64,000 bases of DNA from Oopsacas minuta (lineage: Eukaryota > Animalia > Porifera). The translations under genes were made by a program, and so were the position numbers. Shown here piece by piece: positions 36,688 through 46,244 of this stretch; the first letter of the stretch is position 1; every line of letters begins with the position of its first letter. The stretch covers positions 434,001-498,000 of the forward strand of contig JAKMXF010000177.1 of NCBI GenBank assembly GCA_024704765.1, in the 5' to 3' direction. The notes under the pieces are model-generated. The model was not told where the DNA came from. It did not search any database and saw only the letters and a program-made list of their open reading frames with translations.

Positions 36688-38423
36688 TTACGTAATATAT
36701 AATGTCTTAGACTAGATAAGAAATTCCAATAAATTAGCCATTCATAATTGCAGAGAATTGGTAATTATTAATAATACAAAATGGATAAACTATTAAATGA
36801 ATGATAATATCATCCATAGCATAGGGTCACTAATTAGTAATTAGCTTTTAATCAATTCTGTATTCTAAAGAAATATAAACTACCTTTATAACTTGATTGT
36901 AACTAGAATGGAGTGGCTATAATTGTCAAGGTGCATACGATTATAAAGTCATATTAAGGGGGCAATAAGGGACACCTCTAGTGCCTCTAAATGTAATCAC
37001 CTATCATTGGTTGTCCCCAGGTTCCACATTCCGGGAAATTATTGAGAATGTATGGAGGAATTCGATAAGAATTTCCACGCGTGTGGTTTGACATCTAGAC
37101 ATAACATAACAAAAGTAAATAACTAAACATCCTTTTGTCCCTAGTAACCACAAAGATCTACTAAGACGTGTGGAAAATATGTGTGTAATGGCCAAGGGTG
37201 TGGAAAATTTGATAAATCCTCGAATCAAATCCCACCTTTGACCAATATAGGCCCAGATATACCAAATTGTGGTGTTTTAATTATCGGATATTTGTCCTCA
37301 AAAAAACATATAAATTGTAAAGAAAACAGGTATTTGGCTGCAAATACCTTTGGATTATTTTGTTTATCAGATATTGTTGTCTTCATTTCTCGTATAAAGA
37401 AATCGAATAAAAACAATTCAGGAAGTATAGAAGATAATTACAGTAATTTCATAATTCTTCGTTATAGTAGAGCTGTTAAACAATAAAGTATGCATTTTTG
37501 ATAGTAACCGAATATATCCAGATATTCAGTAAATTAACGAGGAAACAAACTAAAATTTCAATGTTTGAGCCTTAGGGCTGCCAGAAATACAATATTAAAT
37601 AGAAATTTCCAAAGTATACGTAGAGATCAAGGATAAATACAAAATATCAATCTCCCGATATCCGGTTATCCGATTATCGGTTTATCTCTGATAAAGAGTT
37701 AAATTATCCTGGGTCAGCCAGGGTGTGGCTATACCACTGCTACTAGGCATATCAGCTATATTTAATAATTAATATGTGAAATATGCTACAGCACACATCA
37801 GGCCCTTATCTGAGCGCGCACCCAGGCGTCCGTGATTTTTGAAAAATATTTATGAATGATCAATATCAGGTGCTATCTCCATGTTCATAATATATTAGGG
37901 TGCGGGGGGTGCCTAACTCTAGATGAAGCCCTGTAACACACTGATAGCATCAGCCTTTAAAAATTCGTAGGATCGAGCGAGGCTAATACGAAAGTCGCAC
38001 ATAGTTAGTTATAGTTGGCACATTGCTATCATAGAACCTGAATTGAAAAAGATTTAAATTCCTTACCTTGTCAAATATCCTCAAAATATTTTCTACTTTA
38101 CATGACTATTAGGACAACTTTGATATAAGTACAATCAAATCCCCTTAATAGAGCCATCGGGTAATCATTCAGACAGGTCAAGATGTCTTGGTCCCGATGT
38201 AATGATCAGATGTGATCCTATTAAGCAAGATATACTGCATTTTGAATAAATATAATAGTTTAAGTAGTTTTAAAATAAATACAAAAATGCAAGAAATAAG
38301 TTCACAAAATAATTTAATAAAATTCTTTGAGGATGGATGTACAAAACCTCACCAATAAACAGGTATTATAAAAATACAGCTTAGACTAGCAAAGTATATT
38401 TAACACTTAGCTAAGTAACAAAC

Positions 38424-41400
38424 TCAGTTCATATTTTGATAAATAGTCTCTGATAATTTGAGAGAGATCTTCATAGCATTAGCAACAATAGTCTGTATCT
38501 GATGACTGTCATTGTTACACTTGACAGCATCTTTCAATTCTTCTTCATTATGATAGAGAGATAGTTCACAGAATTCTCTACCGACGCTAATATTTTGAGT
38601 GCAGTATTCTATTCCAGTAGTCAACTTAGCAATCGTGTTTTCAAATTGGTAGTACTCAACTTTACGGTAATTCTTAAGTAAGATTAATTTGTCTTTGAGA
38701 TGAGCAGTTAGGGTAGGGGATCCTTTCTTATCAACCGTAAGAATGGGGGAGTTAATTCCATCAGGAAAAATCATATCATAGAAGCCAGAATGTTTTTCTA
38801 AAGGTGTAGAACTCTCTGTACGTAGCCTGACATCGTGGGCCTTTGTAGGATCTAGTTTCTTTCTGTCAGCTACAATAGTTGCTAACATCCATACGAGAGG
38901 ACTCTCACTGACGTCAATCACCTGTAGCTGCTCATCTAGAATAATTCTGACAGATCGGTTTAAAGTTACTTGAATATTAACCATCCATGTAATGACTTGG
39001 CATCTATCTAATTGAACAAATTCACATTGCTGGATTGAATTCATAAATATAGATTTAGTTGACAGCTTATGTATGTCATTGGCTAGCTTAATCCCGGGAC
39101 AGAACCCGCAGCCTAGAGCTCTATTGGTGAGACCATGTGGGTCTTCTATCGGAGGAATAGAAGTGGGAGGATCTTCTTGTACTGGTTGAATGGGAGATGA
39201 TTGGATTTTCAAATCTTTTAAGTATTCGGCTAAAAGATTAATGTCCTCTTCAACAGAATCAAATTTGCGATTGTTTCTTCCTTTTAATAAACAGTTTTCG
39301 AAATCATTCAAGTTGATTGATGAGCCGATACTTTGGAAAGAATCAAAACCTTCAAGTACATAGAAGTAACCAAATCTTGTAATGAATTTAAGATTCTTGA
39401 GCATTTCTGCATTTTTCGCAGGAAAGTGTGAAAGTTGGTTACAGAGCAAAGATTGTATCTTAATTGTACCAGCAGTATTCCAATCGTTGTTAAAGGTGTT
39501 TTCGCCAGCTGAAACGAGAACATTCTTATTATTGCGGTAGTGATGTTCTCTGCAGAGTCCATGATCAAAAGTATTCAGCATAACTTTGGGATTAATGCAG
39601 TGGTTTGACATGATCAATGCCAGACTACCTTCAAGAATATAGTGACTGGTGGTTGACTTATAGCTTTTTGTCAGAGCAGTGTTTGACTCTAACTGTGATA
39701 CTTCATTTGAGAGCTTATGAATAGCTGCTGCAGTGCCATGTGCAGAGAGATGAATATACCTATCTCTCACGTCGATATGAATGAAAGCTCCGCTATTATT
39801 AGATAATATATTCTCGAAAAAATGAGTTGAAGTACGAAGGCTATTACTAAGTAAACTAGAAAATCTTTTATTAAACGACAATTCCAATTGAGACCGCTCG
39901 AATAACTTAGTGATATCTCTTGTGAACACGAGACAATGCCATGCCTGGAATAGTAGAACAGATATCCTACGGAGAGCTGACTCTCTAATGACATGTATAG
40001 GCTCACCTGCTATTGGCCACGTGTAGACTATTTCATGCACGTCATTAGAAGTAATCTTATATCCTAACCAGAAAAATTCTTCCAGCATTAGTCCTAACAT
40101 ATTATCTATAGAAGGTCTCCTAAGCAGTTCTAACATGGAGTAGAGCGAGCTATCAATTTCATTATTCACAACTTGATCTTGTTTACATTTCATTTTATTA
40201 TAAATATGCAAAACCAGAGCTTCAAATTGTGCTGTAATTACAACGCACGTGTTGTTTTCAGAATCACGACATTTTAAGATACCAGTGTGTCGTGCCCAGT
40301 GTATTAAAATCCATAAAAACCCAAAGAATACCCCTTCAGTCTTGCGGTATAATCCTAAGATATATTCAGCCTTCAACACTCCGTCGCTCTCAACAGTTAT
40401 ATCTACGCTAATTTCTGTGCATCTCTCATCTTGTGAGTCTACCTTACAGTTAAGAAATGGGAAACCCTCAAATTTCTCTGTTTTACAACTGGAAATATGT
40501 CCGAGGGGAGGGGAGATAAATGATTTCAAAAGATGTTTCCGTTTCTTAGCGATTTCTAATGTTTTGAATTTCTCTGATTGTGGAATTGAATCCATTCCAA
40601 ACTCGGTCAAGGTCACACAAACGTCTAAGTCTGATTGCAATTCACATAGGTATTTGGAAACAGATCCGTATGCTTCTATACGGAAAATATCTTCTACTTG
40701 ACAGGTCTCATCAGTTCTACAAGCATGGAAAGCGTATTTGTTGATAGCAGAATGGATCTTAGGTAGTAAATTAATCTTTCCCTCTACAACATTAACAATA
40801 TTATCACTATTTCTTGATATGTATTCCCGTGCAGACTTCCCTATCCCTGTATGAAGGTTATGTCCGATAGGGATTGGTTGTTGATATATGGATACAATCT
40901 CACACAGGTATTCTCCAACTAACCAAGGAAAAGAGAGGAAAATGATATCATTTGTTTGTTGTTGTTGATATTGGTAAGCTGTAATATACCATGCTGCTGC
41001 TTTACTCCGATAATCACTTCTTGTTGTCCCTCTATAAAACTTTTCCCTAAATTCTTCCGCTAAGCAGGTAGTAGCAGCTTCCAATGTTCTAATAATCTTG
41101 CTTTTATCTGCGATCAAGAGAGGGTGACACTTCAGCACTAAGCATAACACGACTTCTGCTTCTGTTTCAATGCCAAGAGATAGCATTATAGCTCTTATAG
41201 AATTTTGATATTCGAAATATCTAATACTGGCATCTTTCATGTAATCCTCATAGCCACGTATCTTGAACATATCAATTGCTATATTTCCAGGAGTTTTCTG
41301 ATTGAAATTACGCCCGCTATAATAACTGAGAAGACTCTCCCAACCATTTATGTCTCCGAAACAAACAGCACTAGCTTGTTGGTAGAATTCTCCTAGCAAT

Positions 41401-44400
41401 TTGCTTGACTTATAAGAAACATTCTCTGTCTTCTCCATGAAGTCTGGATACCCTTTCTCTCTAATTAATTGCTTGGCTTTTTCAGGAATAACTGGGAATA
41501 TATTAGTTTTAGGAGCATCTACAGCTAATGAAGCTAGCTTAGCTAGTTCTATTGAAAGATTGTCTCTAGCTCCATCAGGCTTCATATCGCTAATGGCTAC
41601 ATGGTAGTGGGATATGATCCCTAATAAGCTATTAGAAATAACATGGCAGTATGACTGCGCTAATATATCCTGGATGTCTGTAGTGTTTGCGTCTAACACA
41701 GTTATTTCTTTATTAACATTCTGTTGCGAATCTCCAACACTATCTGTGTATTCTTTCAGGACCTGATCGTAATTCAGTGAGGGAAATGTAGCAGTTTGGG
41801 GTGGGATTAAGTCTTCATCCCATATAATTGCAAACTCGTCTCCATCCAGATCCCCACCTCCACTACAAGCCGGAAGCGACGTAGTACCTTTGATAGGAAA
41901 CACGATTACATTGTGTAGATTATGGAGCTCCTCCTTGTCTACTGCTGTAGGCGTTAGCAAATCTCCTGGATGAAGACACGGGTTCTTATAAACAAGCATC
42001 CTTCCTGTTAATCTCCGTATGAGAAGTCTATCTGATGGACGTTCCTCATAGGTGATGTATACTTCTCCGTCTTCAAGCACTCCGATTGGATCAGGGATAC
42101 CCATCAAGATACAGCCGTTTTCCATTGGAATATGAAATCTTTTAGACAAATTATTAACATTGTGTGCATAGATACAACGTAATAATGATATGAAGTATGG
42201 TTCACAGAGAATATCGAAATATTTACTTGTTTCTTTAGGGTAATTATGTAAATGTGAGATTAATTGGCGATTAGCAGTATTTACATCAGTGAAGAGCATT
42301 GCGTTGTGTTCCAGCGCATGTGAGAATATCAGTTTTAATTTAGGTTTAGGGTCCCATTGTAGTTTACTCGAGTCTCTTAAACTTGTTAATAAAGTCAGCA
42401 TTTGTGTATTGAGGAATAACCTATTGTATTTACCAGCTTTAACAATACATAACATAGAATCAGTCCATTCTATTTTCTTCATAGATTCCCTATACATGAT
42501 ACTGTATTGTTTGTTAGTAGATTGTAAATCAGTATCTGTATCATCTACTATAGTTAATACGCCTTTGAGACCAGCTAGCCTGATCTGTATTGCAGAAGTG
42601 TTATCTGTAGTTGGATTGTTCTTTAGTTTTATAGCATCAAATATCTCAGCAGCTTTAGATTTAAGAATCTTACCATTCCCATCAGTTAAGTTTCCACCAT
42701 TAGTAGCAAACAAATCTTGTAACATTATAGTATCCTGCTCATTAATCTTACATACAGGATAATCTGTCGTACAAAATAAACCTAGTCTTGTGAGGTATTT
42801 AGTCTCATTCTTAATCTTAGAATTCCCAATCAGCTGATGCCTGATTTCCCTAATTCTATCAGAAACATTATCTGTACCTCTTATATTAATGAAAATAGCT
42901 TTCTTGCTTCTCAGCTGACTACCACTACAAACTAGAAAATAAAAACTAACTCCCTCGATTTCGATCCCAGATTTGAGTATCCGCTCAACTCTGTGAATGA
43001 CGTCAGAATTCTTAAGCGCTTCGCCATGCTCCTCACAGAATGCTAAATTCAGAAACCGTTCATTAGGAAACATCCTGTATAACCTGTTGCATTGCGCTAG
43101 GAAAGGTTGGATTGGAATAACTGTAGCTGGAGTCACCATTGCAGTTTCAATGAATCTGAAATTATTGGATAGAGACATACTAGTGTCAACATGAGTATGT
43201 ACTCTAATAGAATTCAATATATCATTAAAAGTATTGTATAGATCAAAGAAATAATAGGTAATACCAACTGATAATCGTGAGAGTAGCTGTGACAGAGTTA
43301 AGTTAATATCATCAATTTCCTTCACATTCGATTCGTGAATATCACACAATATCTTGCTGAATGTTTGCTGGGGTATACATATATCTCTACAAGATTTTAA
43401 CACATTTAATTTCCATAAGGTATCCTGCATTGGTTTATAATCCAAATATAAAGGATGAGTCATCAAGCATTGAACTGGTTCATAGGTATGTGTATCAATC
43501 TCGACACGTGACTCGAATACTGGAACAGGGAAGATTGCTAAAAAATGTAAAAATGTCCATAACCGACTCCAATTATATTTATCATACTTCAGTGTAATTC
43601 CAACTACAGGGGAATTAGCGAAATCTGTCAAATATACACATTCATCACATGACAATCTTTTACCACATTTAGTATGTATAGTTGGACAATGGATAAGAGG
43701 AATATATAAAGTAACATCATCCTTGGTCCAGTTAGCTAGAATAAACCGATGTATTGAGGTCAATGGTATCTCTATGACGATCAATTGAGGAGAAGTAGGT
43801 AGAGATATTTCAATACATCTTTCTTGAAACAATTCAAAGGTCCCATTTTCATCACACTTGTATGTTTTCATTAATTCAAAAATTTGTTTATCACGAAAAT
43901 TACCCCAAGAAATAGTCTGTAAAGGCCATTTTGAGTTGATTTGTTGTCCACTCTTCCTCGGTAAGATAATTCTAGTCCAGATACCAGTAGACACCTTATT
44001 GATAATGAATCCCCATTCCATGGTTAGTAATTTGTAACGTTGATAAATGTTAGGAGATAATGTCTGTAATCCCAAAACTAGTAAGGAATCTCCAGGAGGG
44101 AATATGTGTTTGGATTTCCACTTAGAATTGTTATCAGCTAGATCAATCAGTTTAACTTTCAAGAAGTATTTTGTAAATAGAAAATCTGCGATTCTATCTT
44201 GAAGTTTAAACAACTGGTGAGAACCAGTTAAATAAAATTCTACTACACATTCTGATGATTGAATGGAAGAATCAGTCTCACGAGGAGATCTTTCCTGTTT
44301 AATATCTGCTAATTTACTCAGTATTGTCTCTGTAGTAGCTGAGGGAATCTTATTATCATTATAACAATTGGTCAATACTTTTTTAACAAGTTTTTCATGA

Positions 44401-46244
44401 AGTTGTATCTCTTCTGTAAAGATTCTCTCATCTTCTGACATTATTATATAAAACTTACTCTCGGCCCATTTCCTAGCCCTTCCCTTACTCTGTGTGAATG
44501 AAATCAGAGATTTAACGCCATCAAATCGTATAACGACATCACAATCAGGATTATCAATACCCTCTTCGAGAACAGATGTGCTAACCAATAGGTGACAATT
44601 TCCATGTCTAAACTTGTCAATAATTCCATCTTGTTCATTCAGCCAATTCATACCGAATGGACCACTTTGTCCTACGATCTTCAGAGGAGAATACTTTTTG
44701 TTAATTGTTTGATCTTCTTTAAGAATGTTTGTCAGCATATGAGCCAGACGTCTGGTTTTGACAAATACTAATATTTTAGAACTTTTTGGTAATTCTGTGA
44801 GTATTGATAGAAGCTTTAACACCCGGGGAGACAATACTTTATCAGGTTTAAGGTCCTTGATTATGTCTAGGTTTTCTAGCATTTTGTGAGCATCTGTAAT
44901 TCCTAGCATTTCTGTAATCTCTAACACGTCACAGATTATCTTCATTGACTTAACATGTTGTTCTAGTAATATATCGTTATTCAATTCTAATTGATATAAC
45001 ATAGTGGATAATTGAATCCTGTTTTTGTTAAGTTTCCAATCTTCTTTAAAAATTAGTTCAACTTGAGAACGGTCATTAATTGCATCAGCTAGTCTGTACA
45101 ACTCTTTCTCTAGTTTTTCTAGATATTCACAAAGTGCCCAAACAGGCTTTTCAGTAATGATCTGTTTCTTTATCTTAGCGTCATCAATAGCATGTTTATC
45201 TAAAGATAGATTGTGACAGATAGGAGCATTGAAGAATACCTTCCTAAACTTGTCTAATAGCACTTTAGTATTCTCAGGATTACCTTTAGTAGAGGGAGGA
45301 GATGCAGTTAGACCCAATACCCTGGGACGAGGATTACAACCAGCGATCATTTCCAGCAAGATAACATAGTCATGAGATTTCGTAGCATGATGACACTCGT
45401 CAAATATCACCAAGCAGAATTTACTCACTCTAACCTCTCTCTCTAAAGCAAGGTAAGCACCAGCTGTTGATACTACGACATCGTAGAATCCTTGATTCAG
45501 TTGCATGCGTTTCAAGTTTGTATTGAATTCACTGGTGATAGGACAAGCTCTCAAGTGTGTGTCTGTGCTAATAGATTCTGCCTGCTGGAATACTAACGGA
45601 ATTCTGTCTACAATGAATAGCACCATCCTGGAAGGATTCAATGCCTTCATTCTAGCAGTAATGATACTAGCTACTAACGTTTTCCCGTAACCAGTGGGTA
45701 GAACTAATACAAGATCTCTCTGTAGAGCTTCTATATAAGCTGTGATCTGATAGTCCCTGGGTGTCACATCTGACATTATGATGTCATCATAATTGAAGTC
45801 TGATATATTTTCAGGGTTTGGCCAGTTGATGGAAACAGCTTTGGGGGTAGTTTTAGTTGGAACAGTCAAAATGTTAGTGAGTCCGGGGAAGCCATAAAAA
45901 TTATGAGGATACCGGATCTTTATTCCATTGTAAGGTGGGTTTGTATACAAATTGTGCCAGCGATCTTTCTTTTCTGATTTTTTCCCCAAGACAACTACTC
46001 CCTGGCCAAATGCCATTATGTCAGCGTGGTTAGGACCAAAGCAGTGCTTCGTGCCAATTTTAGAATTACAATATAAACATATTATAAAATATTGGCTGCG
46101 TTTATCGTTAATGAATTTAAACTTATCTTCGTAGAAAATAGACTCTTCGAATTTTATCATCAGTTCTACGAACTTATCTCGTTTTTGGAAGAAACACAGA
46201 TCATCAGCAGGGACCAAAGCTTTATGACAATGACCACAATTCAT
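38424..46244 (-). CDS. 2606-aa fusion: CxxC/CxxC Zn domain + Dicer/RIG-I-like DExH helicase + eukaryotic RNA-dependent RNA polymerase + Cid1/TUTase-like nucleotidyltransferase + unassigned C-terminus
   Basis: Helicase motifs: PTGYGKT (45678-45698), DECH (45390-45401), LTAS, VFVKTR, STSVLEEGID, QSKGRAR (44472-44492). RdRP motifs: SGSQLR, RLGLF, TDGNG, AIQIRLAGLKGVL, KNPCLHPGD, GGDLDGDEF (DLDGD 41838-41852), KAAAWY, LSFPW. Nucleotidyltransferase motifs: YGS (40662-40670), SDLD (40623-40631), VDIT (40401-40403), LIHWAR, LGLMLEEFF. Confidence 0.95.
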   Translation of the reverse strand: MNCGHCHKALVPADDLCFFQKRDKFVELMIKFEESIFYEDKFKFINDKRSQYFIICLYCNSKIGTKHCFGPNHADIMAFGQGVVVLGKKSEKKDRWHNLYTNPPYNGIKIRYPHNFYGFPGLTNILTVPTKTTPKAVSINWPNPENISDFNYDDIIMSDVTPRDYQITAYIEALQRDLVLVLPTGYGKTLVASIITARMKALNPSRMVLFIVDRIPLVFQQAESISTDTHLRACPITSEFNTNLKRMQLNQGFYDVVVSTAGAYLALEREVRVSKFCLVIFDECHHATKSHDYVILLEMIAGCNPRPRVLGLTASPPSTKGNPENTKVLLDKFRKVFFNAPICHNLSLDKHAIDDAKIKKQIITEKPVWALCEYLEKLEKELYRLADAINDRSQVELIFKEDWKLNKNRIQLSTMLYQLELNNDILLEQHVKSMKIICDVLEITEMLGITDAHKMLENLDIIKDLKPDKVLSPRVLKLLSILTELPKSSKILVFVKTRRLAHMLTNILKEDQTINKKYSPLKIVGQSGPFGMNWLNEQDGIIDKFRHGNCHLLVSTSVLEEGIDNPDCDVVIRFDGVKSLISFTQSKGRARKWAESKFYIIMSEDERIFTEEIQLHEKLVKKVLTNCYNDNKIPSATTETILSKLADIKQERSPRETDSSIQSSECVVEFYLTGSHQLFKLQDRIADFLFTKYFLKVKLIDLADNNSKWKSKHIFPPGDSLLVLGLQTLSPNIYQRYKLLTMEWGFIINKVSTGIWTRIILPRKSGQQINSKWPLQTISWGNFRDKQIFELMKTYKCDENGTFELFQERCIEISLPTSPQLIVIEIPLTSIHRFILANWTKDDVTLYIPLIHCPTIHTKCGKRLSCDECVYLTDFANSPVVGITLKYDKYNWSRLWTFLHFLAIFPVPVFESRVEIDTHTYEPVQCLMTHPLYLDYKPMQDTLWKLNVLKSCRDICIPQQTFSKILCDIHESNVKEIDDINLTLSQLLSRLSVGITYYFFDLYNTFNDILNSIRVHTHVDTSMSLSNNFRFIETAMVTPATVIPIQPFLAQCNRLYRMFPNERFLNLAFCEEHGEALKNSDVIHRVERILKSGIEIEGVSFYFLVCSGSQLRSKKAIFINIRGTDNVSDRIREIRHQLIGNSKIKNETKYLTRLGLFCTTDYPVCKINEQDTIMLQDLFATNGGNLTDGNGKILKSKAAEIFDAIKLKNNPTTDNTSAIQIRLAGLKGVLTIVDDTDTDLQSTNKQYSIMYRESMKKIEWTDSMLCIVKAGKYNRLFLNTQMLTLLTSLRDSSKLQWDPKPKLKLIFSHALEHNAMLFTDVNTANRQLISHLHNYPKETSKYFDILCEPYFISLLRCIYAHNVNNLSKRFHIPMENGCILMGIPDPIGVLEDGEVYITYEERPSDRLLIRRLTGRMLVYKNPCLHPGDLLTPTAVDKEELHNLHNVIVFPIKGTTSLPACSGGGDLDGDEFAIIWDEDLIPPQTATFPSLNYDQVLKEYTDSVGDSQQNVNKEITVLDANTTDIQDILAQSYCHVISNSLLGIISHYHVAISDMKPDGARDNLSIELAKLASLAVDAPKTNIFPVIPEKAKQLIREKGYPDFMEKTENVSYKSSKLLGEFYQQASAVCFGDINGWESLLSYYSGRNFNQKTPGNIAIDMFKIRGYEDYMKDASIRYFEYQNSIRAIMLSLGIETEAEVVLCLVLKCHPLLIADKSKIIRTLEAATTCLAEEFREKFYRGTTRSDYRSKAAAWYITAYQYQQQQTNDIIFLSFPWLVGEYLCEIVSIYQQPIPIGHNLHTGIGKSAREYISRNSDNIVNVVEGKINLLPKIHSAINKYAFHACRTDETCQVEDIFRIEAYGSVSKYLCELQSDLDVCVTLTEFGMDSIPQSEKFKTLEIAKKRKHLLKSFISPPLGHISSCKTEKFEGFPFLNCKVDSQDERCTEISVDITVESDGVLKAEYILGLYRKTEGVFFGFLWILIHWARHTGILKCRDSENNTCVVITAQFEALVLHIYNKMKCKQDQVVNNEIDSSLYSMLELLRRPSIDNMLGLMLEEFFWLGYKITSNDVHEIVYTWPIAGEPIHVIRESALRRISVLLFQAWHCLVFTRDITKLFERSQLELSFNKRFSSLLSNSLRTSTHFFENILSNNSGAFIHIDVRDRYIHLSAHGTAAAIHKLSNEVSQLESNTALTKSYKSTTSHYILEGSLALIMSNHCINPKVMLNTFDHGLCREHHYRNNKNVLVSAGENTFNNDWNTAGTIKIQSLLCNQLSHFPAKNAEMLKNLKFITRFGYFYVLEGFDSFQSIGSSINLNDFENCLLKGRNNRKFDSVEEDINLLAEYLKDLKIQSSPIQPVQEDPPTSIPPIEDPHGLTNRALGCGFCPGIKLANDIHKLSTKSIFMNSIQQCEFVQLDRCQVITWMVNIQVTLNRSVRIILDEQLQVIDVSESPLVWMLATIVADRKKLDPTKAHDVRLRTESSTPLEKHSGFYDMIFPDGINSPILTVDKKGSPTLTAHLKDKLILLKNYRKVEYYQFENTIAKLTTGIEYCTQNISVGREFCELSLYHNEEELKDAVKCNNDSHQIQTIVANAMKISLKLSETIYQNMN

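What the first reader, a model, noticed from the sequence alone, without database searches (positions are those of the whole stretch)
39920..40700. Nucleotidyltransferase module has an intact catalytic triad but an unusual nucleotide-recognition loop
Seen: YGSVSKYLCELQSDLDVCV, a third Asp in SVDITV, LIHWAR and the PAP-associated helix LGLMLEEFF are all present. Where Cid1/TUT/Trf4 enzymes have the acidic I(E/Q)DP nucleotide-recognition motif, this protein reads VYTWPIAGEP. Known: this loop sets U versus A versus UG specificity in the family. Inference: the enzyme may add a non-standard tail, for example mixed or pUG-like, that primes or licenses the adjacent RdRP.
Basis: partly seen in the sequence, partly recalled or inferred. 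Interest (0 to 1): 0.72.

Follow-up and report, generated by a model that had tools for sequence, protein, structure and literature searches.

The report
RdRP-fused tailing enzyme, remodelled nucleotide pocket
A glass-sponge gene for a giant RNA-copying enzyme carries a built-in RNA-tailing domain that keeps its catalytic core but has replaced most residues that normally choose the nucleotide, and this variant is shared by an old, unstudied eukaryotic family, so what it adds to RNA cannot yet be predicted.

Summary
They lie in residues 1859-2082 of one intronless 2606-aa ORF (38424-46244, minus strand). Residues 1800-2119 fold as a complete Cid1/GLD-2/TUTase-type nucleotidyltransferase (Z 18-19.5 to about 50 solved enzymes). 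A profile of the family reaches GLD-2 at E 3e-11.

Across 42 relatives (glass sponges, Hydra, dinoflagellates, unnamed metagenomic proteins) the Gly-Ser and the three Asp are invariant. The base and sugar contacts are not:
- Cid1 Asn171 is an invariant Lys.
- Tyr212 is Ala or Gly.
- Lys193 is hydrophobic.
- No member has an I(E/Q)DP motif. An invariant Trp-Pro hairpin sits in that place.

So the unusual recognition region is real and is a family hallmark. The proposed pUG-like or mixed tail cannot be tested here.

Two further domains follow the transferase: a KH domain and a Cet1/RESC-like triphosphate-tunnel domain. The protein is therefore Zn domain, helicase, RdRP, transferase, KH, tunnel. 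The genome is Oopsacas minuta and holds five intact paralogues.

The scan had already noted this architecture on this window (s1-226612). A follow-up report described it on a paralogue elsewhere in the same genome (s1-261134).

The parts
38424..46244 (-). Single intronless ORF of 2606 aa (the end coordinate includes the stop codon). Domain order: Zn domain, DExH helicase, RdRP, nucleotidyltransferase, KH, triphosphate-tunnel domain.
   Evidence: It is 100% identical to P0001.
39888..40847 (-). Cid1/GLD-2-type nucleotidyltransferase module, residues 1800-2119 (catalytic palm plus central helical domain).
   Evidence: VIA-align Z 18-19.5 over model residues 1-320. Foldseek E about 1e-7. Profile against PDB E 3e-11. 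hhalign against canonical sponge and other TUTases gives 98% probability, E 3e-14.
40614..40670 (-). hG[GS]-x10-DhDh motif. G1860 and S1861 with metal ligands D1872 and D1874.
   Evidence: Invariant in 42 of 42 sequences.
40392..40409 (-). SVDITV, carrying the third catalytic Asp D1948 (codon 40401-40403).
   Evidence: Invariant in 42 of 42. It aligns to the third Asp of GLD-2, TbTUT4 and Tailor.
40368..40382 (-). G1955-x-x-K1958-A1959. The invariant Lys sits at the position of the canonical Asn-Thr/Ser (Cid1 N171-T172), which contacts the ribose 2'-OH and the base O2.
   Evidence: Alignments (TbTUT4, Tailor). G and K are 42 of 42. The role of N171 is taken from PMC3479196.
40290..40307 (-). 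LIHWAR helix. R1985 is the counterpart of Cid1 K197 (kept). I1981 is the counterpart of K193 (lost).
40224..40235 (-). T2004-A2005-Q-F2007. It is the counterpart of canonical S-Y (Cid1 S211-Y212). The base-stacking Tyr is replaced by Ala.
   Evidence: Three independent alignments agree (GLD-2, CutA and TbTUT4; hhalign).
40071..40097 (-). LGLMLEEFF helix. This is the first helix of the PAP-associated region and the last element that aligns to canonical enzymes by sequence.
   Evidence: All HMMER and hhalign alignments end here. G2051 is invariant and F2057 is 41 of 42.
39987..40028 (-). Beta hairpin VYTW-PIAGE-PIHVI (residues 2073-2086). It holds the invariant W2076, plus P2077, P2082, H2084 and I2086, and occupies the place of the canonical nucleotide-recognition motif.
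   Evidence: Model strands 272-276 and 284-288 in A1 numbering. W is 42 of 42, P2077 34 of 42, P2082 28 of 42, H2084 15 of 42. No IEDP-like motif in the family.
39669..39893 (-). KH-fold domain, residues 2118-2192, without a GXXG loop.
   Evidence: Z 8-9, about 70 residues aligned, rmsd 2.2-2.6 to hnRNP K, PCBP and Nova KH domains. Sequence.
38427..39647 (-). Triphosphate-tunnel (Cet1/RESC-like) domain, residues 2200-2606.
   Evidence: RESC1/2 Z 21-23 (274 residues, rmsd 3.1). Cet1 Z 17, Pct1 Z 15. Foldseek E 2.5e-10.
41376..43136 (-). Eukaryotic cellular RdRP domain, residues 1037-1623, with DLDGD at residue 1465.
   Evidence: PF05183 E 2e-113. Motif located.
44475..45764 (-). DExH helicase, residues 161-590 (GYGKT at 185, DECH at 282).
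   Evidence: PF04851, PF00270 and PF00271. Motifs.
45945..46244 (-). N-terminal CxxC...CxxC domain with weak similarity to the RIG-I C-terminal domain and to Yippee.
   Evidence: PF11648 E 0.011 and PF03226 E 0.014, both below cut-off. The domain is conserved across the family.

Best explanation
Residues 1800-2119 are a divergent but probably active terminal ribonucleotidyltransferase of the Cid1/GLD-2/TUTase (Pol-beta) kind. It is built into a single-chain version of an RdRP complex.

Shown:
- The fold is complete, with both the catalytic palm and the central helical domain.
- The metal and phosphate-binding set is kept: Gly-Ser, three Asp, and the Arg and Thr that correspond to Cid1 K197 and S211.
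- The residues that read the sugar and base in canonical enzymes are replaced by a family-specific set that is itself conserved: invariant K1958 for Asn171, A2005 for Tyr212, I1981 for Lys193, and an invariant-Trp hairpin in place of the IEDP...His/Asn loop.

Inferred: the domain adds untemplated nucleotides to the 3' end of an RNA that the same polypeptide's helicase and RdRP handle, either the template or the product. This would parallel what Cid12, Rdn1/2 or RDE-3 do in trans for their RdRPs. The following KH domain would hold single-stranded RNA. The tunnel domain would hold or process a 5'-triphosphate end.

Which nucleotide is added cannot be read from the sequence.
For: - Fold: Z 18-19.5 to about 50 solved ncPAP/TUTase entries over the whole module. 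Foldseek probability 1.0.
- Homology: A4 profile against PDB gives GLD-2 3.4e-11, CutA 1.3e-9 and Cid1 2.3e-8. hhalign gives 98% probability, E 3e-14. PF22600 is above Pfam's cut-off in three of the five paralogues in the genome.
- Catalytic residues and K1958, G1955, W2076 are invariant in 42 sequences drawn from glass sponges, Hydra, dinoflagellates and unnamed metagenomic proteins. Further relatives from the same search are named as an acoel, a flatworm and a diplonemid.
- The domain almost always lies C-terminal to an RdRP with DLDGD, and the whole architecture is conserved end to end.
- RdRP-transferase partnerships are documented in S. pombe, Tetrahymena and Paramecium (PMC4066745).
- KH and tunnel folds.
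- The ORF is intact, and an organism-B relative about 95% identical carries an in-frame 3-nt deletion at 39486.
- One run of the same sample shows contig depth of about 400-860 inside the ORF against 2-7 just outside it. This suggests transcription.
Against: - There is no biochemical data for any family member.
- This copy scores below Pfam's gathering threshold for PF22600 (22.6 against 27 bits).
- One of the two triphosphate-binding lysines, the ribose-sensing Asn and the stacking Tyr are all missing. A loss of ordinary NTP binding cannot be excluded.
- The models gave no coordinates, so I could not check which residues line the pocket.
- The run that looks like RNA has no recorded library type, and contigs cannot prove expression.
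Confidence: 0.6

Rival explanations
1. The domain is an ordinary oligo(A) or oligo(U) tailing enzyme. The divergent loop is drift, and specificity is set by other residues, so nothing non-standard is added.
For: - Canonical poly(A) polymerases also lack the IEDP-type motif, and they score as high structurally as the TUTases (yeast PAP Z 18.5).
- H2084 is present in the sponges and in several dinoflagellate and unnamed members (15 of 42). It could play the part of the uridine-selecting His of Cid1 (PMC3479196).
Against: - Asn171 makes its dual sugar-base contact in every uridylyltransferase structure solved by 2012. Its counterpart here is an invariant Lys.
- The stacking aromatic is Ala or Gly.
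- The replacement residues are conserved as strongly as the catalytic ones. That is not what drift produces.
Confidence: 0.3
2. One reading: the enzyme makes a mixed or pUG-like tail that recruits or primes the RdRP in cis.
For: - The base-reading residues are remodelled.
- The domain is covalently linked to an RdRP.
- From my own knowledge, C. elegans RDE-3 pUG tails recruit RdRP.
Against: - Nothing in the sequence points to alternating U/G.
- No comparison with RDE-3 could be made, because no tool returned its sequence.
- Eukaryotic RdRPs of this class commonly initiate de novo, so a primer is not required.
Confidence: 0.1
3. The domain is a catalytically inert scaffold or RNA-binding module. 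It keeps the fold for structural reasons, like the inactive N-terminal modules of TUT4/7.
For: - Three canonical NTP-contact residues are lost: the counterparts of K193, N171 and Y212.
- The neighbouring tunnel domain also appears to have lost its metal-binding Glu pair.
Against: Pseudo-transferases normally lose the Asp triad. Here G, S and all three Asp are invariant across 42 sequences that fall to 20% identity with this copy.
Confidence: 0.12
4. The domain does chemistry other than RNA 3' tailing. Examples are OAS/cGAS-like synthesis of a nucleotide signal on the dsRNA made by the RdRP, or nucleotidylation of a protein or small molecule.
For: - OAS and cGAS share the same two-domain fold, from my own knowledge.
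- The pocket is unlike that of any characterised tailing enzyme.
Against: - All top structural matches are RNA-tailing enzymes. The significant sequence matches are too, apart from a few weak, sub-threshold hits to minimal bacterial-type nucleotidyltransferases.
- No OAS or cGAS entry appears among the 50 best rows or among the profile hits at E up to 10.
- A KH domain follows directly.
Confidence: 0.05

Closest known systems
Cid1 / GLD-2 (TENT2) / TUT4-TUT7 / CutA non-canonical ribonucleotidyltransferases
   Same: - Same two-domain fold over the whole catalytic module (Z 18-19.5).
- Same hG[GS]...DhD...D catalytic signature.
- Same WA[KR] and LGxLLxxFF helices.
   Different: - No PAP_assoc Pfam match and no I(E/Q)DP...H/N recognition motif.
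- The Asn171, Tyr212 and Lys193 counterparts are Lys, Ala and Ile/Val.
- The segment between the FF helix and the last helix is about 20-30 residues shorter and carries an invariant Trp-Pro.
- It is fused to an RdRP rather than free-standing.
- The same genome has ordinary members for contrast: a TUT4/7 orthologue with ICIEDPFNLNHNLG, and two others.
RdRP complexes with a separate nucleotidyltransferase: S. pombe RDRC (Rdp1-Hrr1-Cid12), Tetrahymena Rdr1-Rdn1/Rdn2, Paramecium Rdr-Cid pairs
   Same: The same three activities are brought together: RdRP, helicase (in S. pombe) and a Cid1-type transferase (PMC4066745).
   Different: Here all three are one polypeptide, with a KH domain and a triphosphate-tunnel domain added. 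The transferase belongs to a separate, divergent subfamily. No functional data exist.
Helicase-RdRP fusion proteins of Dictyostelium (RrpA-C), oomycetes, Hydra and Nematostella
   Same: The DEAD/DExH helicase, Helicase_C, RdRP architecture is already described for these organisms (PMC4791657). The Hydra vulgaris protein LOC105846402 is a member of the present family.
   Different: That paper reports only Pfam-visible domains and does not contain the word 'nucleotidyl'. Papers on RrpC found here do not mention a transferase either. Whether the Dictyostelium and oomycete proteins carry this module was not tested.
RESC1/RESC2 and Cet1-type RNA triphosphatases (for the C-terminal domain next to the transferase)
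   Same: Same tunnel fold (Z 21-23 and 15-17). In RESC2 the tunnel binds the 5'-triphosphate of guide RNA without hydrolysing it (PMC10201420).
   Different: No detectable sequence similarity. The strand that resembles Cet1 motif A reads K-F-I/K-T-R-F-G instead of E-x-E-x-K-F-G (equivalence inferred from the pattern, not from a superposition). Catalysis is therefore doubtful.

Membership tests
Cid1/GLD-2/TUTase-type ribonucleotidyltransferases (Pol-beta superfamily) | hG[GS]-x9-13-Dh[DE]h motif plus a third carboxylate about 50-80 residues later | tested here: met
   G1860, S1861, D1872, D1874 and D1948 are invariant in 42 of 42 sequences.
Cid1/GLD-2/TUTase-type ribonucleotidyltransferases (Pol-beta superfamily) | Two-domain fold: catalytic palm plus the central PAP/OAS1-type helical domain | tested here: met
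   Model residues 1-320 align to Cid1 43-377, GLD-2 155-479 and TUT7 1000-1333, among others, at Z 18-19.5.
Cid1/GLD-2/TUTase-type ribonucleotidyltransferases (Pol-beta superfamily) | Significant sequence or profile similarity (Pfam PF22600 palm domain) | tested here: met
   - Family profile against PDB: E 3e-11.
- hhalign: 98% probability.
- PF22600 is above the cut-off in three paralogues.
- This copy alone scores 22.6 bits, below the 27-bit cut-off.
Cid1/GLD-2/TUTase-type ribonucleotidyltransferases (Pol-beta superfamily) | PAP-associated domain (PF03828) with the type-2 nucleotide-recognition motif I(E/Q)DP...(H/N) | tested here: not met
   - No PF03828 hit at E up to 10.
- 0 of 42 members carry the motif, against 7 of 8 canonical controls.
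- All alignments stop at the LGxxLxxFF helix.
Cid1/GLD-2/TUTase-type ribonucleotidyltransferases (Pol-beta superfamily) | Canonical NTP contacts: Asn (Cid1 N171), stacking Tyr/Phe (Y212), two Lys (K193, K197), Ser (S211) | tested here: not met
   - N171 is K1958 (42 of 42).
- Y212 is A2005 (A 27, G 7).
- K193 is I1981 (V 23, I 7).
- Kept: K197 as R1985 and S211 as T2004.
Sources.
Cid1/GLD-2/TUTase-type ribonucleotidyltransferases (Pol-beta superfamily) | Template-independent addition of nucleotides to RNA 3' ends | not testable with these tools
   Needs an enzyme assay.
RdRP complex (RDRC-like: RdRP + helicase + nucleotidyltransferase) | Physical association of the three activities | tested here: met
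   They are covalently fused in one ORF. The architecture is conserved end to end in Hydra, dinoflagellate and other relatives.
RdRP complex (RDRC-like: RdRP + helicase + nucleotidyltransferase) | Role in siRNA production or silencing | not testable with these tools
   No small-RNA or genetic data are available for this organism.
Triphosphate tunnel metalloenzymes (Cet1-like), C-terminal neighbour | Eight-strand (or more) tunnel fold | tested here: met
   RESC1/2 Z 21-23, Cet1 Z 17, Pct1 Z 15, T. cruzi Cet1 Z 14-15.
Triphosphate tunnel metalloenzymes (Cet1-like), C-terminal neighbour | Metal-binding glutamates of motifs A and C (Cet1 E305, E307, E496) | tested here: inconclusive
   - The motif-A-like strand reads K-F-I/K-T-R-F-G, with no Glu.
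- One invariant Glu (E2560 in FCELSL) remains.
- No residue-level superposition was available.
KH domain (type I), between transferase and tunnel | beta-alpha-alpha-beta-beta-alpha fold with a GXXG loop | tested here: inconclusive
   The fold is met: Z 8-9, about 70 residues, rmsd 2.2-2.6. No GXXG is present between the first two helices in this protein or in the consensus.

The most novel reading that the evidence does not exclude
The invariant Lys/Trp pocket defines a new specificity class of terminal transferases. It writes a 3' mark that no characterised TENT makes. Together with the KH domain and the 5'-triphosphate tunnel domain, it would let a single polypeptide recognise, tag and copy an RNA. 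That would be a self-contained silencing amplifier inherited from early eukaryotes.
Probability: 0.2. Interest if true: 0.8.

Novelty: new variant of a known kind. Interest (0 to 1): 0.55.

Why it matters
RdRP-based silencing repeatedly depends on a partner nucleotidyltransferase (Cid12, Rdn1/2, RDE-3). How tailing and copying are coupled is still unclear.

This family fuses the two covalently, so the functional link is fixed by gene structure. It also pairs the transferase with a KH domain and a 5'-triphosphate-tunnel domain. Its nucleotide pocket is conserved but unlike that of any characterised enzyme.

A single recombinant domain could therefore show a new specificity rule for this enzyme class. 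It could also show what mark these RdRPs need. The family occurs in experimentally tractable animals (Hydra, Macrostomum), so the question can be tested.

Tried and rejected
- Single-sequence search of the module against PDB found nothing. The sponge-only profile gave only CutA at E 0.3. The broader 42-sequence profile was needed.
- Residue-level placement of the recognition motif failed in four attempts. hhalign against three canonical sponge enzymes stopped at the FF helix. Forced global and low-threshold runs gave alignments with near-zero confidence that disagree with one another. One puts IEDP under TRDI.
- The word search for more canonical enzymes returned only five.
- The only IEDP in the whole protein (residues 2366-2369) lies in a low-confidence loop of the C-terminal tunnel domain, about 250 residues past the module. 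I rejected it as a displaced recognition motif.
- No run on record as RNA holds the gene. The contig depth pattern in one run is suggestive only.
- PF26253, listed in the precomputed annotations, is absent from the local Pfam library. It could not be identified.
- Literature searches found no description of a transferase domain in helicase-RdRP proteins. The library is partial, so this does not prove the domain is undescribed.
Full report
**What is there.** The finding lies inside one uninterrupted minus-strand ORF, 38424-46244, of 2606 aa.
- Pfam sees a DExH helicase (residues 161-590) and a eukaryotic cellular RdRP (1037-1623, E 2e-113).
- It also gives a sub-threshold match to the palm domain of mitochondrial-type poly(A) polymerases, PF22600, at residues 1854-1966. 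The score is 19-22.6 bits against a cut-off of 27.
- The finding's coordinates correspond to residues about 1849-2108.

**Organism and copies.** The window is contig C177 of a 61.46-Mb assembly in 365 contigs.
- Two NCBI proteins named Oopsacas minuta 'RNA-dependent RNA polymerase 1-like' are 100% identical to two paralogous loci of this assembly. The genome is therefore that glass sponge.
- It holds five intact copies of about 2600-2670 aa with no stop in the frame. They are 47-52% identical to this one within the transferase module.
- The scan had already noted the whole-protein architecture on this window (s1-226612). A follow-up had described a paralogue on another contig (s1-261134). My results agree with these and were reached independently.

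**Is it a nucleotidyltransferase?** Yes.
- An AF2 model of residues 1800-2250 was built on 26 sponge homologues (pLDDT 77).
- Its first 320 residues match the complete catalytic modules of GLD-2, CutA, MEAT1, TUT1, RET2, URT1, TbTUT4, yeast PAP, Cid1 (43-377), TUT7 and mtPAP. Z is 18-19.5, with 250-275 residues aligned at rmsd 3.2-4.3. Foldseek gives E about 1e-7 and probability 1.0.
- These subfamilies are tied, so the fold does not assign a subfamily.
- By sequence, the single protein finds nothing in PDB. A 42-sequence family profile (A4) reaches GLD-2 at 3.4e-11, CutA 1.3e-9, TbTUT4 5.6e-9, Tailor 6.5e-9, Cid1 2.3e-8 and Trf4 6e-5.
- hhalign against canonical enzymes, three of them from this same genome, gives 98% probability and E 3e-14.
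- PF22600 exceeds Pfam's own cut-off in three of the five paralogues.

**The family.** A profile search of 1.84 billion representatives found 92 proteins at E up to 1e-3.
- Nearly all the long ones carry the RdRP signature DLDGD a few hundred residues upstream.
- Named members come from Hydra vulgaris, the dinoflagellates Prorocentrum, Polarella and Effrenium, the diplonemid Diplonema papillatum, the acoel Convolutriloba and the flatworm Macrostomum.
- Every segment of the sponge protein has counterparts in these proteins, in the same order: N-terminal Zn domain, linker, post-RdRP region, transferase and both C-terminal parts.
- This is therefore an old or widely spread eukaryotic architecture and not a sponge invention.
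- The helicase-RdRP part is known from Dictyostelium, oomycetes, Hydra and Nematostella (PMC4791657). That paper and the RrpC papers I found do not mention a transferase domain.

**The catalytic core is intact.** In A4, ten columns are invariant (identity to this copy 20-70%). They are G1860, S1861, S1871, D1872, D1874, D1948, G1955, K1958, G2051 and W2076. The Gly-Ser and the three Asp are the metal and phosphate set of the Pol-beta superfamily. In Cid1 these are S90, D101, D103 and D160 (PMC3479196).

**The nucleotide pocket is remodelled.** Three independent alignments agree on the counterparts of the Cid1 contacts described in PMC3479196. The alignments are HMMER to GLD-2, CutA, TbTUT4 and Tailor and hhalign to sponge and other TUT4/7-type enzymes.

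| Cid1 residue | Role in Cid1 | Counterpart here | Frequency in 42 sequences |
|---|---|---|---|
| N171 | Dual contact to ribose 2'-OH and base O2; seen in all uridylyltransferase structures solved by 2012 | K1958 | K 42 of 42 |
| T172 | Ribose hydroxyls | A1959 | T 22 of 42 |
| K193 | Beta and gamma phosphate | I1981 | V or I 30 of 42 |
| K197 | Gamma phosphate | R1985 | R 37 of 42 |
| S211 | Gamma phosphate | T2004 | T or S 39 of 42 |
| Y212 | Stacks on base and ribose | A2005 | A or G 34 of 42 |

An aromatic or large hydrophobic residue lies two positions after A2005 (F2007). The phosphate and metal side is largely kept, while the sugar and base side is replaced by a set that is itself conserved.

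**The recognition loop.**
- In Cid1 the motif is residues 327-339. D330 and E333 read N3 through waters, and H336 reads O4.
- The sponge's own TUT4/7 orthologue reads ICIEDPFNLNHNLG.
- In the fused family no member has [ILVFM][EQ][DE]P anywhere in the module (0 of 42, against 7 of 8 controls).
- The only column with an acidic majority downstream of the FF helix is D2110, in a TRD motif at the end of the last long helix.
- Every significant alignment stops at the LGLMLEEFF helix.
- What follows in the model is a short hairpin and then a helix: strand IVYTW, loop PIAGE, strand PIHVI.
- Conservation in the hairpin: W2076 invariant, P2077 34 of 42, P2082 28 of 42, I2086 28 of 42. H2084 is present in 15 of 42, namely the sponges and several dinoflagellate and unnamed members but not Hydra.
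- The segment is about 20-30 residues shorter than in canonical enzymes.

Two registers are plausible.
- Register (a): hhalign's low-confidence extension puts W2076 under the Trp that precedes IEDP in TUT4/7-type enzymes and A-G-E-P under I-E-D-P. The seven-residue FNLNHNL loop is then deleted.
- Register (b): an ungapped count from that Trp, which also matches strand to strand, puts I-H-V-I under I-E-D-P.

In both registers the acidic pair and the His/Asn-bearing loop are absent. I could not settle the register because the tools return no coordinates or residue-level superposition.

**What follows the transferase.** A second model covers residues 2118-2606 (34 sequences, pLDDT 82).
- It shows a KH fold at 2118-2192. 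Z is 8-9 to hnRNP K, PCBP and Nova KH domains, with about 70 residues aligned at rmsd 2.2-2.6. There is no GXXG loop.
- It shows a triphosphate-tunnel domain at 2200-2606. RESC1/RESC2 give Z 21-23 (274 residues, rmsd 3.1), Cet1 gives Z 17, Pct1 Z 15 and T. cruzi Cet1 Z 14-15.
- RESC2 uses this tunnel to bind the 5'-triphosphate of guide RNA. It is inactive because two of the three metal-binding Glu are missing (PMC10201420).
- In the sponge family the strand resembling Cet1 motif A reads K-F-I/K-T-R-F-G, with no Glu. One invariant Glu (E2560) and several conserved Arg and Lys remain. A 5'-triphosphate-binding role therefore seems likelier than hydrolysis. This is an inference from the sequence pattern only.

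**How it most likely works.**
- Shown: a complete, conserved Cid1-type module with intact catalytic residues, fused after an RdRP and before a KH domain and a tunnel domain.
- Inferred: it tails the 3' end of an RNA engaged by the same polypeptide. This would be the cis equivalent of Cid12 with Rdp1, Rdn1/2 with Rdr1, or the Paramecium Cid-Rdr pairs. KH would hold single-stranded RNA, and the tunnel would hold the 5'-triphosphate end that de novo RdRP products carry.
- Unknown: the nucleotide added.

**Expression.** No run recorded as RNA holds the gene.
- Among runs of the same sample, two have flat contig depth across the gene and its flank (about 52-90).
- A third has about 400-860 inside the ORF against 2-7 in the intergenic DNA beyond the stop, apart from a repeat. 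Its contigs begin about 100 nt past the stop codon.
- That pattern is what an RNA library would give. However, the library type is not on record and contigs cannot prove expression.
- An organism-B run carries a copy about 95% identical, with an in-frame 3-nt deletion at 39486.

**Verdict.**
The product and its role remain open.
- The module is a divergent, RdRP-fused subfamily of a well-known enzyme class: a new variant of a known kind.
- Its interest lies in a conserved, uncharacterised nucleotide pocket and in its domain company, not in this one loop alone.

Noticed in passing
window 38427-39893 (residues 2118-2606): A KH-fold domain and a Cet1/RESC1-2-like triphosphate-tunnel domain follow the transferase. 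Neither is seen by Pfam. The Cet1 motif-A glutamates appear to be replaced by basic residues, as in the 5'-ppp-binding pseudo-enzyme RESC2.
   Followed up: partly
window 45945-46244 (residues 1-100): The N-terminal CxxC...CxxC domain has weak, sub-threshold similarity to the RIG-I C-terminal domain and to Yippee (E about 0.01). It is conserved in Hydra and dinoflagellate relatives.
   Followed up: partly
L001-L005 (G000 contigs C177, C354, C321, C348, C33): There are five intact paralogues of the whole roughly 2600-aa gene in a 61-Mb genome, with no stop in the frame. They are 47-52% identical in the transferase module. Two are 100% identical to NCBI proteins named Oopsacas minuta.
   Followed up: partly
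L006, L007, L008 (G000 C354:970327-973500, C299:72168-75329, C354:785077-788244): The same genome has three ordinary Cid1-family genes with canonical IEDP/IEEP motifs. One is a TUT4/7 orthologue with a CCHC knuckle and the uridine-type His (ICIEDPFNLNHNLG). All appear as single long ORFs.
   Followed up: partly
window 37794-37990: A short interspersed repeat lies just downstream of the gene. Contig depth is several-fold higher in all runs, with many loose ends and divergent copies, also in the related organism B.
   Followed up: no
window 38325-43300: One run of the source sample (library type not on record) has contig depth of about 400-860 inside the ORF but 2-7 in the flank, while two sister runs are flat. 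It looks like an RNA library and suggests that the gene is well transcribed, with a 3' UTR of about 100 nt.
   Followed up: partly
window 39486: A run from a different organism label carries a copy about 95% identical, with a 3-nt (in-frame) deletion.
   Followed up: no
window 39138-39149 (residues 2366-2369): The only IEDP in the protein sits in a low-confidence loop of the tunnel domain, in a stretch that is not conserved. It is not a displaced recognition motif.
   Followed up: yes
residues about 1626-1799 (window 40848-41369): The region between the RdRP and the transferase is conserved across the whole family. The precomputed annotations list a Pfam family (PF26253) that the local library lacks. 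It may cover this region.
   Followed up: no
window 39915-39938 (residues 2103-2110): A conserved H-x4-[TS]-R-[DS] motif lies at the end of the last helix of the transferase module (H 37 of 42, R 35 of 42). Its role is unknown.
   Followed up: no
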